From assembly GCA_002269645.1 (NCBI GenBank), contig NIVC01003595.1:1-25020 (forward strand): a DNA stretch of 25,020 nt, read 5' to 3'. Within the stretch, counting starts at the first letter, position 1, and every line of letters begins with the position of its first letter. The translations under genes were made by a program, and so were the position numbers. The DNA comes from Macrostomum lignano (Eukaryota). Shown here one piece after another: positions 9,720-11,279 of the stretch. Under the pieces are notes generated by a model. The model was not told where the DNA came from. It did not search any database and worked only from the letters and a program-made list of their open reading frames with translations.

Positions 9720-9770
9720 ATGAGACTCATCCTGTTGGCAGCCTGCGCTGCGGTGCTCTGCACTCTCGTG
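9720..9770 (+). CDS. Exon 1 (signal peptide [17 protein letters not shown]) of a secreted hyper-arginine-rich protein
   Basis: ATG at 9720, 17 codons forming a textbook n/h signal region, then a perfect donor GTG|GTAAGT at 9771, phase 0. Confidence 0.8.
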
Positions 9771-9868
9771 GTAAGTTCCGAAGTTCCAAATTGAACGATA
9801 GGACTATATGCCAGCACGATCTGTTGCATGTAGCAGACAGTGCACCTTACTTCGTCGAACCGTTTCAG

Positions 9869-11002
9869 CTCTCAGCACCGACACCAAATGCTAACAACAA
9901 GCTGAAGAAACCTGCAGCTAAAAACGCCACAGCCACTGCTGGATCCGCCAACCAGCCAGCAAACGTTAGCAGGCTGTGCAAAAGACCGGCAGATAAGAAA
10001 GATATGAAAGATAAAAGAGGAGGAAGACGCGACAGCTGGAGACGAAGATGGGCCATCAGACGAGCCTCGAGACGTGTCCGCAGTAGACGTGTCTCTAGAA
10101 GAAGAGGAATTCGTCGTGTCAGACGTGCCAGACGTTACCGCAGACGCGCCTTCAGACGAGCCAGACGTGCTCGCAGAAGCCGTGATGTGAGAAGGAGAGG
10201 CGGCCGTCGTGCTAGAAGCGCCAGACGTAACCGCAGACGTGCCATCAAACGTGCCATCCGCAGGCGCGGCATTCGCAGACGTGCCATCCGCAGACGCGCC
10301 ATCCGCAGGCGCGCCATCAGACGCGCCAGACTTAACCGCAGACGGGCCATCCGCAGACGCGCCATCCGCAGACGTGCCATCAAACGTGCCATCCGCAGAC
10401 GCGCCATCCGCAGACGCGCCATCCGCAGACGCGCCATCCGCAGACGCGCCATCCGCAGACGTGCGATCCGCAGGCGCGCCATCAGACGCGCCATCCGCAG
10501 ACGCGTCAGACGTGCTCGTAGAAGCCGTGATGTGAGAAAGAGAGGCGGCCGTCGTGCTAGAAGCGCCAGACGTAACCGCAGACGTGCCATCAAACGTGCC
10601 ATCCGCAGGCGCGCCATCCGCAGACGCGCCATCCGCAGACGCGCCATCCGCAGACGCGCCATCCGCAGACGGGCGATTCGCAGACGGGCGATCCGAAGAC
10701 GCGCCATCCGCAGACGTGCGATCCGCAGACGGGCCATCCGCAGACGTGTCAGACGTGCTCGCAGAAGCCGTGACGTGAGGAGAGGCGGCCGTCGTGCCAG
10801 AAGCGCCAGACGTAACCGCAGACGTGCCATCAGACGCGCCATCCGCAGACGCGCCATCAGACGCGCCATCCGCAGACGCGCCATTAAACGTGCCATCCGC
10901 AGGCGCGCCATCGGACGCGCCAGACTTAACCGCATACGGGCCATCCGCAGACGTGCGATTCGCAGACGCGCCTCTAGACGTGACCGCAGAAGACTTCTCT
11001 AG
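9869..11002 (+). CDS. Exon 2 of the secreted hyper-arginine-rich (RRRAI)n protein; spliced product ~394 aa, possibly extending to 11081 if a 2-nt deletion at ~10990 is an error
   Basis: Acceptor CGTTTCAG ends at 9868 and is the only nearby AG in phase with exon 1. Joining gives ...CTLVLS/APTP, a typical signal-peptidase site. Variation among the 15-nt repeats is mostly synonymous (CGC/CGT/CGG/AGA/AGG, ATC/ATT). Confidence 0.82.
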
Positions 11003-11279
11003 GAGAAGAAACAGCCGTCGTGTCAGACGTACCGCCAGACGGGATGAAGACGCTGTCTCGCTGGCTGAAATTTGTTCGTGAAATTGATTACTTTTCGGGT
11101 TTTGGTGATTAAAACTTGTCGTGATATTTGTTGGTGTTTCGGAAATATATAAACTCTTGTCTACTTAACGATTCGGTTGACTTTTAGTTATTTGGGGTCT
11201 TAAGTATAATATTAACTGTAGGGTCCCTGTTAGGGTCTCTCTAACTGTAGGGTCCCTGTTAGGGTCTCTATTAACATGT

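What the first reader, a model, noticed from the sequence alone, without database searches (positions are those of the whole stretch)
9720..11081. Hidden two-exon gene for a secreted, protamine-like (RRRAI)n polycation
Seen in sequence: a 17-codon signal-peptide exon not in the ORF track splices through a perfect GTAAGT donor and an in-phase TTTCAG acceptor (98-nt intron) onto the Arg-rich ORF. The product is [23 protein letters not shown]..., then a ~50-aa spacer with two N-glycosylation sequons (NAT, NVS), a Cys and a KR dibasic site. About 320 aa follow, with over half Arg: three copies of [11 protein letters not shown](R/K)[17 protein letters not shown], each followed by (RRRAI)n. Repeat variation is mostly at synonymous positions, which argues for real coding constraint. 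Established: protamines and sperm nuclear basic proteins share RRVSRRR/RRGGRR motifs but are nuclear and have no signal peptide. Highly cationic secreted proteins are known in invertebrate adhesives (for example the K/R-rich Macrostomum adhesive protein ap1) and among antimicrobial peptides. Inference: this is a gland-secreted polycation (adhesive or coacervate component, secretory-granule/rhabdite packing protein, seminal-fluid protein, or a convertase-processed precursor of many cationic amphipathic antimicrobial or cell-penetrating peptides). It is likely to be missed or mis-annotated.
Basis: partly seen in the sequence, partly recalled or inferred. Interest (0 to 1): 0.82.

Follow-up and report, generated by a model that had tools for sequence, protein, structure and literature searches.

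The report
Orphan flatworm gene: secreted poly-arginine protein
A small two-exon gene, probably from the flatworm Macrostomum lignano, appears to encode a signal peptide followed by about 375 residues that are half arginine (net charge about +190); the sequence statistics favour a real coding gene, but its expression, splicing and function are all untested.

Summary
ATG 9720, a 17-codon hydrophobic exon, a GTAAGT donor at 9771, a 98-nt intron and a TTTCAG acceptor ending at 9868 join in phase to the Arg-rich ORF. The product is 394 aa, 47% Arg overall and 56% over the last 320 aa. One correction: the ORF as assembled stops at 11000-11002, not 11081. Position 11081 is reached only if one T is removed from CTTCTCT (10994-11000).

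The array is not just a minisatellite:
- 35 of 48 unit variants fall on codon position 3.
- All indels between the three long repeats are multiples of 3.
- The frame stays open through 99 non-repeat codons (chance 1.7%).
- An in-phase signal-peptide-like exon with a consensus donor arises in 2 of 20,000 resampled upstreams.

Caveats:
- An antisense (MARLR)n frame shares the same wobble positions.
- The only database relative is a 113-aa M. lignano model called "Ribonuclease E/G". It uses an acceptor 7 nt downstream and jumps into the acidic frame.
- No transcript data were reachable.
- No true homologue was found in Pfam, PDB or 1.8 billion representative proteins.

The secreted-polycation reading is plausible but inferred. 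The amphipathic antimicrobial-peptide and convertase-precursor sub-readings are disfavoured.

The parts
9656..9663 (+). TATA-like box CATAAAAG, 57-64 nt upstream of the ATG
   Evidence: ATAAAAG at 9657. No TATAAA or poly(A) hexamer is present on the minus strand in 9300-11400. Promoter function is inferred.
9720..9770 (+). Exon 1 coding part: 17 codons, [17 protein letters not shown] (n- and h-regions of a signal peptide)
   Evidence: It is the only signal-peptide-like in-phase model found upstream of the ORF, and arises in 2 of 20,000 resampled upstream regions. These 51 nt translate identically in the frame used by the paralogue model P0001.
9771..9868 (+). 98-nt intron, phase 0: GTAAGT donor, CTTAC branch-point candidate (A at -20), TTTCAG acceptor
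   Evidence: If the intron is retained, the ATG frame stops after 24 codons. A competing CAG ends at 9875; using it gives a 26-codon dead end from the ATG.
9869..11002 (+). Exon 2 coding part as assembled (377 codons plus TAG): end of the signal peptide (LS), spacer, Arg-rich lead, three long repeats
   Evidence: It is the only frame with no stop across both the unique and the repeated sequence.
9875..10024 (+). Non-repetitive spacer, residues 20-69: [12 protein letters not shown]...KDKRGG, with NAT and NVS sequons, one Cys and a KR
   Evidence: The first 30 residues are identical in P0001.
10025..10165 (+). Non-repeated Arg-rich lead ([45 protein letters not shown])
   Evidence: The single visible difference from P0001 (CGA to CGC) is synonymous in the Arg frame and is E to A in the acidic frame.
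10166..10495 (+). Long repeat A: [29 protein letters not shown] followed by (K/R)RRAI units
   Evidence: (periods 15 and 240).
10496..10738 (+). Long repeat B
   Evidence: Indels relative to A and C are 3, 12 and 18 nt.
10739..10999 (+). Long repeat C, degenerating towards its 3' end (R to G, R to I)
10994..11000 (+). CTTCTCT: site of a 1-nt indel (a real mutation or an assembly error) that shifts the frame
   Evidence: Removing one T gives a 420-aa ORF.
10998..11081 (+). Probable ancestral C-terminus, now in the +1 frame: [27 protein letters not shown]
11108..11113 (+). ATTAAA poly(A) signal candidate
   Evidence: Function is inferred.

Best explanation
This is a real, taxonomically restricted (orphan) protein-coding gene on the + strand, most likely of Macrostomum lignano. 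A short first exon supplies a cleavable signal peptide. A 98-nt intron joins it in phase to a single large exon that grew by tandem duplication of 12- and 15-nt units ([13 protein letters not shown]) and of a roughly 240-nt higher-order unit.

The predicted mature product is about 375 aa (about 400 if the 3' indel is an error). It is probably N-glycosylated, low in sequence complexity and probably disordered, and carries a net charge near +190. Inferred mechanism: it enters the secretory pathway and acts through multivalent binding of its guanidinium groups to a polyanion such as sulfated or carboxylated glycans, polyphosphate, nucleic acid or microbial and substrate surfaces. It would then be a charge-driven condensing or cohesive component of a gland secretion.

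Shown here: gene anatomy, coding-type constraint, composition, lack of homologues. Inferred: transcription, choice of acceptor, secretion, binding partner, tissue.
For: Coding-type constraint:
- 35 of 48 unit variants fall at codon position 3. All five third positions are polymorphic. None of the CpG transitions that would give Cys, His or Thr is seen.
- Indels among the three long copies are 3, 3, 12, 18 and 12 nt.
- The Arg frame has no stop over 9707-10999 and runs out of the repeat through 99 unique codons (chance 1.7%).

Gene signals:
- The in-phase signal-peptide exon with a consensus donor has a chance of 1e-4 with GTRAGT and 0.7% with any GT.
- The TTTCAG acceptor is the first AG after a CTTAC branch-point candidate 20 nt upstream. 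By the established first-AG rule it should be preferred.
- A TATA-like box lies upstream and ATTAAA downstream on the + strand. No such signals are present on the minus strand.

Second copy:
- The M. lignano model P0001 overlaps the same exons on the same strand. Its one visible coding difference is synonymous in the Arg frame.

Precedent in the same animal:
- Extremely cationic secreted repeats are functional in M. lignano. The Mlig-ap1 K/R regions have a calculated pI above 14, and adhesion is blocked by heparin (PMC6410801).
Against: - No transcript, junction read or peptide could be reached.
- The window is saturated with minisatellites. One of them (21462-23309) is open for 615 codons by chance.
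- An antisense frame shares the wobble positions and scores 30 synonymous to 18 non-synonymous.
- The 3' end carries a frameshift and degenerate units.
- There is no acidic pro-piece to neutralise +190 charges during transport (0 Glu, 8 Asp).
- There are no homologues from which to infer function.
Confidence: 0.6

Rival explanations
1. It is a non-coding minisatellite. The 15-nt array is one more tandem repeat in a repeat-saturated region, open in several frames because its period is a multiple of 3, and the upstream 'exon' is a coincidence.
For: Ten or more other arrays lie in the same 25 kb. One gives a 615-aa chance ORF. Three of six frames are largely open across the array. There are no true homologues.
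Against: Variation is restricted to third positions, and indels are all multiples of 3, including two 3-nt ones. The frame continues through 99 unique codons (1.7% by chance). The signal-peptide exon has a chance of 1e-4. Control arrays with periods of 27 and 39 nt had too few variable sites to be informative.
Confidence: 0.12
2. It is a decaying or inactive copy (pseudogene) of such a gene. The ancestral ORF ran to 11081, and this copy has a frameshift and degenerate terminal units.
For: An Arg-rich reading resumes in the +1 frame right after the stop. Removing one T restores a 420-aa ORF. The last long repeat has R to G and R to I changes. The M. lignano assembly is known to hold many near-identical duplicated blocks (PMC5730564).
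Against: The shift removes only the last ~26 residues. A single-base indel in a CT run is also a typical long-read assembly error. The other 392 codons are intact.
Confidence: 0.12
3. It is a conventional nuclear protamine-like sperm protein, translated from the internal ATG at 10004 (MKDKRGGRR...) without a signal peptide.
For: The composition and short motifs (VSRRR, RRGGRR) resemble fish protamines (my recollection of salmine, not tested). An in-frame ATG lies just before the Arg-rich part.
Against: No Pfam protamine family matches. The protein is about 330 aa, far larger than protamines. The frame stays open and is conserved in the paralogue for 45 codons upstream of that ATG. The in-phase signal-peptide exon is unlikely by chance.
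Confidence: 0.07
4. The P0001-type transcript is the real one: the 9875/9876 acceptor and/or removal of 9965-10010 is used. This would give either a non-coding RNA with a 26-codon upstream ORF or a short acidic protein ending at 10192. Combined with the 9869 acceptor it would be a secreted acidic protein.
For: This is the structure of the only deposited model. The local OGDH exon suggests that purine-rich acceptors may be tolerated in this genome (my reading).
Against: The acidic frame has a stop in every long repeat. It scores 4 synonymous to 44 non-synonymous. The one paralogue difference changes an amino acid in that frame. The 46-nt 'intron' has a weak donor (GTTAGC) and no pyrimidine tract. 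The model changes frame twice, which is typical of a gene predictor avoiding an odd composition (inference).
Confidence: 0.06
5. The coding strand is the minus strand: the 269-aa (MARLR)n ORF at 10944-10135.
For: It starts with ATG. It shares the wobble positions of the Arg frame, so it scores 30 synonymous to 18 non-synonymous.
Against: It is confined to the repeat and closed at both edges. Five GCC to GCG changes are M to I in this frame. No TATA or poly(A) hexamers are present on the minus strand. The consensus GTAAGT...CAG intron and the paralogue model are on the + strand.
Confidence: 0.03

Closest known systems
Mlig-ap1, the cohesive adhesive protein of Macrostomum lignano (K/R- or 'GRK'-rich regions A-C)
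   Same: It comes from the same (probable) organism. It is secreted and has very long low-complexity repeats with extreme positive charge. Its function depends on charge: heparin blocks attachment and added cations block release (PMC6410801; PMC8621496). Trypsin-based mass spectrometry fails on it for the same reason it would fail here.
   Different: Mlig-ap1 is about 5,400 aa with a folded core (C-type lectin, vWD/C8/TIL and EGF domains). Its repeats are rich in Lys, Gly, Ser and Pro (for example SRKPRRKNRKSRKP). The protein here is about 375 aa with no Pfam domain. It has almost no Lys (14 K against 184 R) and an RRRAI unit. No sequence similarity was detected.
Protamines and protamine-like sperm nuclear basic proteins
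   Same: About half of the residues are Arg, in clusters separated by Ser, Ala, Val and Gly. Short motifs such as VSRRR and RRGGRR recur (resemblance recalled from fish protamines, not tested). The expected strong binding to polyanions is shared.
   Different: Protamines are nuclear, have no signal peptide and are usually 30-100 aa. Here there is an in-phase signal-peptide exon, two sequons and about 375 aa. There was no hit to any Pfam family or PDB chain.
Precursors of cationic antimicrobial peptides (signal peptide, anionic pro-piece, cationic peptide; for example Hydra arminins and cathelicidins)
   Same: A signal peptide followed by a strongly cationic C-terminal part, with dibasic sites.
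   Different: There is no anionic pro-piece (0 Glu). The cationic part is over 300 aa, not 20-40 aa. (RRRAI)n has no amphipathic moment as an alpha-helix (0.11 against 0.45-0.68). Dibasic cleavage would destroy the cationic units.
Polycation components of coacervate glues (sandcastle-worm Pc1/Pc2/Pc4/Pc5, mussel foot proteins)
   Same: Secreted, repetitive, disordered polycations stored in gland granules with a polyanionic partner (from general knowledge, not tested here).
   Different: Those proteins are rich in Lys, Gly, Tyr or DOPA and His. This one is Arg, Ala and Ile with only one Tyr, one Phe and two Trp, so there is no DOPA or cation-pi chemistry. No partner polyanion is known.

Membership tests
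Protamine / sperm nuclear basic protein | Sequence match to a curated protamine or protamine-like family | tested here: not met
   No Pfam family at E<=0.01. No PDB chain at E<=1.
Protamine / sperm nuclear basic protein | No secretory signal; a small nuclear protein | tested here: not met
   An in-phase exon encodes [21 protein letters not shown]. The mature length is 375 aa. SignalP itself was not available.
Protamine / sperm nuclear basic protein | Spermatid-specific expression and replacement of histones on sperm DNA | not testable with these tools
   No expression data were reachable.
Mlig-ap1-type flatworm adhesive protein | Core of C-type lectin, vWD/C8/TIL and EGF domains flanked by GRK-rich repeats | tested here: not met
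   No Pfam domains. The repeat unit is RRRAI, not GRK or SRK (PMC8621496).
Mlig-ap1-type flatworm adhesive protein | Expression in adhesive gland cells of the tail plate and presence in footprints | not testable with these tools
   Needs in situ hybridisation or footprint mass spectrometry.
Cationic antimicrobial-peptide precursor | Anionic pro-piece plus a short amphipathic cationic peptide released at defined sites | tested here: not met
   0 Glu and 8 Asp. Hydrophobic moment 0.11 at 100 degrees. 110 dibasic sites are spread throughout.
Classical secretory protein (cleavable N-terminal signal peptide) | Basic n-region, hydrophobic core of 7-15 or more residues, small uncharged residues at -3 and -1 | tested here: met
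   M-R, then [16 protein letters not shown], then V(-3) L S(-1) | A P. It passes a crude Kyte-Doolittle criterion that 2 of 20,000 random upstream regions pass in phase. SignalP was not run.
Protein-coding tandem repeat (as opposed to a non-coding minisatellite) | Variation concentrated at synonymous sites, frame-preserving indels, and a frame continuous with unique coding sequence | tested here: met
   35 of 48 variants at position 3. Indels of 3, 3, 12, 18 and 12 nt. The frame is open over 9707-10999. Caveat: one antisense frame shares the wobble positions.
Ribonuclease E/G (the name carried by the database paralogue P0001) | S1 and catalytic RNase E/G domains | tested here: not met
   No Pfam hit for the window protein. 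P0001 has no precomputed Pfam domain and is a chimera of three reading frames. The name probably reflects a low-complexity match (inference).

The most novel reading that the evidence does not exclude
An 'extracellular protamine': a gland-secreted, glycosylated 47-kDa poly-arginine protein (net charge +190). The flatworm would use it outside cells. It could be the cationic half of a charge-driven coacervate or granule (adhesive, rhabdite or mucus, eggshell or cement, or prostate secretion). Alternatively it could be a cell-penetrating, nucleic-acid- or membrane-binding weapon against microbes, prey or a mating partner's sperm. It would have arisen de novo by expansion of a 15-nt unit.
Probability: 0.3. 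Interest if true: 0.7.

Novelty: new variant of a known kind. Interest (0 to 1): 0.5.

Why it matters
If expressed and secreted, this would be one of the most arginine-dense secreted proteins I know of (my recollection, not a survey).

- It raises a cell-biological question: how is a chain with about +190 charges and no acidic pro-piece translocated, packed and released?
- It offers a short, genetically encoded model polycation for work on coacervates and bioadhesion. The animal already has a proven charge-based glue, plus RNAi and transgenesis (PMC6410801, PMC5730564).
- It is a clean example of a coding gene born from a minisatellite.
- It shows how gene predictors mis-handle such genes: the deposited paralogue model switches frame twice and carries an enzyme name.

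If it is not expressed, it is a caution. Third-position-only variation can be mimicked in two overlapping frames.

Tried and rejected
Searches that led nowhere:
- Homology. Two word-indexed searches, with 157 aa and with the non-repetitive 80 aa, found only P0001.
- An exhaustive phmmer of the full protein against 1.84 billion representatives gave 52 hits. On inspection, all but P0001 are unrelated period-5 low-complexity ORFs such as HAVDK, GREAV, RRRAV, RRRSI and KASIR. They were rejected as homologues.
- Pfam, PDB and Rfam gave nothing.
- Locating P0001's DNA and the window's own ORFs in the collection failed, so there is no paralogue locus and no transcript contig.
- The third homologue search used the OGDH exon to test whether the database covers M. 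lignano. It found no M. lignano protein. Absence of hits therefore cannot be read as 'unannotated in the Mlig_3_7 assembly'.
- Literature searches found no description of this protein. Terms tried: the string [10 protein letters not shown]; Macrostomum with protamine, arginine-rich or seminal fluid; rhabdites with arginine. Wasik et al. 2015 could not be opened, so the origin of the P0001 model (MAKER, from my memory) is unverified.

Tests that were uninformative or did not apply:
- A codon-phase control on the window's 27-nt and 39-nt arrays had too few variable sites.
- The bacterial promoter and terminator scan does not apply to a eukaryote.

Readings rejected:
- The codon-aligned antisense (DGASA)n frame is open over 9875-11164 but scores 2 synonymous to 46 non-synonymous and has no start codon.
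- The QTRHP frame has 16 stops.
- The amphipathic-helix reading fails on hydrophobic moment.

Structure prediction was not run. A single low-complexity sequence without an alignment would not give usable evidence.
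Full report
**What the window is.** The 25-kb window is eukaryotic and saturated with minisatellites. These include a 4.5-kb CT-only 19-mer array and arrays with periods of 27, 32, 39, 41, 23 and 31 nt. It carries an exon of 2-oxoglutarate dehydrogenase E1 (24021-24368; E 1e-31 to human OGDH). It also carries the C-terminus of a GTF3C3/TFIIIC-102 homologue (5888-6718; E 1e-10) and reverse-transcriptase fragments. The only database relative of the finding is a 113-aa UniRef entry from Macrostomum lignano (P0001). It is identical over the 30 residues [30 protein letters not shown]. The window therefore comes from M. lignano or a very close relative. That genome is reported to be 15% simple and tandem repeats, with extensive near-identical duplications (PMC5730564).

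**Checking the observation.** Every stated sequence feature is present.
- ATG at 9720, and a 51-nt exon encoding [17 protein letters not shown].
- GTG|GTAAGT donor at 9771, a 98-nt intron, and a TTTCAG acceptor ending at 9868.
- Exon 2 from 9869, in phase with the long ORF.
- The spliced product has 394 aa, including 185 Arg, 67 Ala and 41 Ile.
- After the predicted cleavage at VLS|AP, the mature chain has 375 aa, 184 R, 14 K, 8 D, 0 E, a net charge of +190 and a mass of 47 kDa.
- Sequons lie at N36 and N49, Cys at 54, and KR at 55-56. The last 320 residues are 56% Arg.
- TRF finds periods of 15 and 240 nt. Codon-by-codon parsing shows three copies of a ~30-residue unit, each followed by runs of RRRAI, KRAI and RRAI units.

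**One correction.** The frame stops at TAG 11000-11002, not at 11081. Just after the stop, an Arg-rich reading resumes in the +1 frame ([27 protein letters not shown], ending at 11081). Removing one T from CTTCTCT (10994-11000) yields a continuous 420-aa ORF. This copy therefore carries a 1-nt insertion, or the assembly has an indel error.

**Coding gene or open minisatellite?** ORF length means nothing in this window. A 23-nt array at 21462-23309 is open for 615 codons, and three of the six frames across the Arg array are largely open. Other tests are informative.
1. Mismatches to the consensus unit CGC AGA CGC GCC ATC fall at positions [1,0,3|0,1,5|1,0,15|0,4,5|2,4,7]. That is 35 of 48 at codon position 3, or 35 synonymous against 13 non-synonymous where 29% synonymous is expected. 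All five third positions vary. Of the six possible CpG transitions only the synonymous one (CGC to CGT) is seen.
2. Indels between the three long copies are 3, 3, 12, 18 and 12 nt.
3. The Arg frame is the only one that leaves the repeat. It is stop-free over 9707-10999, including 99 non-repeat codons of exon 2 (338 of 20,000 Markov resamples).
4. Resampled upstream regions gave such an exon in 2 of 20,000 cases with a GTRAGT donor and in 21 of 3,000 with any GT.
5. A TATA-like CATAAAAG lies 57 nt upstream of the ATG, and ATTAAA lies at 11108. No such hexamers occur on the minus strand.
6. The visible differences between the window and P0001 are two changes in the 5' UTR and one change in the Arg-rich lead. 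That one (CGA to CGC) is synonymous in the Arg frame and E to A in the acidic frame.

- The antisense frame (MARLR)n, a 269-aa ATG-initiated ORF at 10944-10135, shares its wobble positions with the Arg frame and scores 30 synonymous to 18 non-synonymous. The synonymous-site argument alone therefore does not fix the strand. The minus-strand reading is rejected on other grounds. It is confined to the repeat, five GCC to GCG changes are M to I in it, and it lacks flanking signals, whereas the intron and the paralogue model lie on the + strand.
- A second CAG ends at 9875, 7 nt after the first. Using it, the ATG frame dies after 26 codons. P0001 uses exactly that acceptor.
- P0001 also removes a 46-nt 'intron' (9965-10010; weak GTTAGC donor, purine-rich acceptor) and continues in the acidic frame to a stop at 10192. 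It is therefore a chimera of three reading frames that carries the name 'Ribonuclease E/G'. I regard it as a gene-predictor artefact, for three reasons. The acidic frame has a stop in every long repeat. It scores 4 synonymous to 44 non-synonymous. The first AG after the CTTAC branch-point candidate is the one normally used. This is inference, not data.
- No RNA evidence could be reached. P0001's locus is not on record. The window's ORFs are not in the protein collection. The collection seems to cover M. lignano poorly, because an OGDH-exon query found no M. lignano protein.

**Relatives.** There are none beyond P0001. Pfam, PDB and two word-indexed searches found nothing. An exhaustive phmmer against 1.84 billion representatives gave 52 hits. 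All of them except P0001 are unrelated period-5 low-complexity ORFs, and none covers the N-terminal spacer. As far as these libraries show, the gene is an orphan. It was evidently built by expansion of 12- and 15-nt units and of a higher-order unit of about 240 nt.

**How it most likely works.** Shown: a signal-peptide-type N-terminus, a short spacer bearing sequons with one Cys, then over 300 residues of nearly pure Arg, Ala and Ile. Inferred: co-translational entry into the ER, N-glycosylation, possibly disulfide dimerisation through Cys54, and secretion as a low-complexity, probably disordered polycation. Its activity would be multivalent binding of oxyanions such as sulfate, carboxylate and phosphate. 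The best precedent is in the same animal. The K/R-rich regions of Mlig-ap1 (calculated pI above 14) mediate cohesion of the temporary glue. Heparin blocks attachment, and free cations block release (PMC6410801; PMC8621496). The present protein is not a member of that family, since it has no lectin, vWD or EGF core and a different repeat unit.

(RRRAI)n has almost no alpha-helical hydrophobic moment (0.11, against 0.45 for magainin 2 and 0.68 for an LL-37 segment). Convertase cleavage at the 110 dibasic sites would leave Ala-Ile stubs, not cationic peptides. The absence of any acidic pro-piece implies a polyanionic packing partner if the protein is stored in granules. Which gland makes it, if any, cannot be told from sequence.

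**Verdict.**
- Observation: confirmed, with a corrected 3' end.
- Gene model: about 0.6 that it is a functional, spliced gene encoding a protein with a signal peptide.
- Rivals: chance ORF 0.12, decaying copy 0.12, internal-start protamine-like protein 0.07, P0001-type transcript 0.06, antisense ORF 0.03.
- Function: inferred only.
- Novelty: a new variant of a known kind (secreted low-complexity polycations), with extreme composition and no family.
- Interest: moderate at 0.5. It would rise if junction reads and gland-specific expression were found.

Noticed in passing
window 1-4507: A 4.5-kb satellite of a 19-nt unit made almost entirely of C and T (CTTCCCCTCTCTTCCTCCC, about 244 copies, GC skew -1.0). 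Strand asymmetry is extreme, and on the minus strand it yields long Glu/Gly/Arg/Lys 'ORFs'.
   Followed up: no
window 5888-6718 (array 6205-6491): This is the C-terminus of a GTF3C3/TFIIIC-102 homologue (E 1e-10 to 8clk_D, two matched stretches). A 32-nt minisatellite sits between the stretches. It appears to fill an intron (GTACAT at 6194 to CGCAG at 6510) that happens to be open in frame, so a naive ORF reads straight through it.
   Followed up: partly
window 24021-24368, then 24369-24765: An exon of 2-oxoglutarate dehydrogenase E1 (E 1e-31 to human OGDH) ends at CAG|GTGGGT near 24314. It is followed at once by a 31-nt minisatellite inside the next intron.
   Followed up: partly
window 21462-23309: A 23-nt minisatellite (78 copies) is open for 615 codons (QPVQIPTDSQSKSPQTASPNPHR...) although its period is not a multiple of 3. 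It is a useful local control showing that ORF length alone is meaningless in this genome.
   Followed up: partly
window about 8780-8860 and 9140-9230: An inverted repeat with arms of about 80 bp, separated by about 280 bp (foldback or MITE-like), lies about 500 bp upstream of the gene. It also produces mirrored small ORFs (LLIGGRSS.. and LIALIGGRSS..) on the two strands.
   Followed up: no
window 11213-11291 and 11280-14895: Directly downstream of the gene lies a 29-nt mini-repeat (TAACTGTAGGGTCCCTGTTAGGGTCTCT). Then come broken retroelement pieces: an RT-like fragment at 11280-11711, a C2H2 zinc-finger ORF at 12431-12997, and an RVT_1 fragment at 13990-14895.
   Followed up: no
window 10011-10192 (+1 frame of the Arg-rich lead): Because Arg codons AGA and CGN read as GAC, GAA and GAG one base later, the +1 frame of the polycation encodes a polyanion ([34 protein letters not shown]...). 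This is the frame chosen by the deposited model P0001. With the 9869 acceptor and removal of 9965-10010, one locus could in principle give a secreted acidic product. There is no evidence that it does.
   Followed up: partly
proteins P0032, P0007, P0026: Unrelated database ORFs of unknown origin carry similar penta-repeats: (RRRSI)n after an acidic N-terminal part, and (RRRAV)n. They are probably translated satellites, but they show that RRRxΦ arrays recur elsewhere.
   Followed up: no
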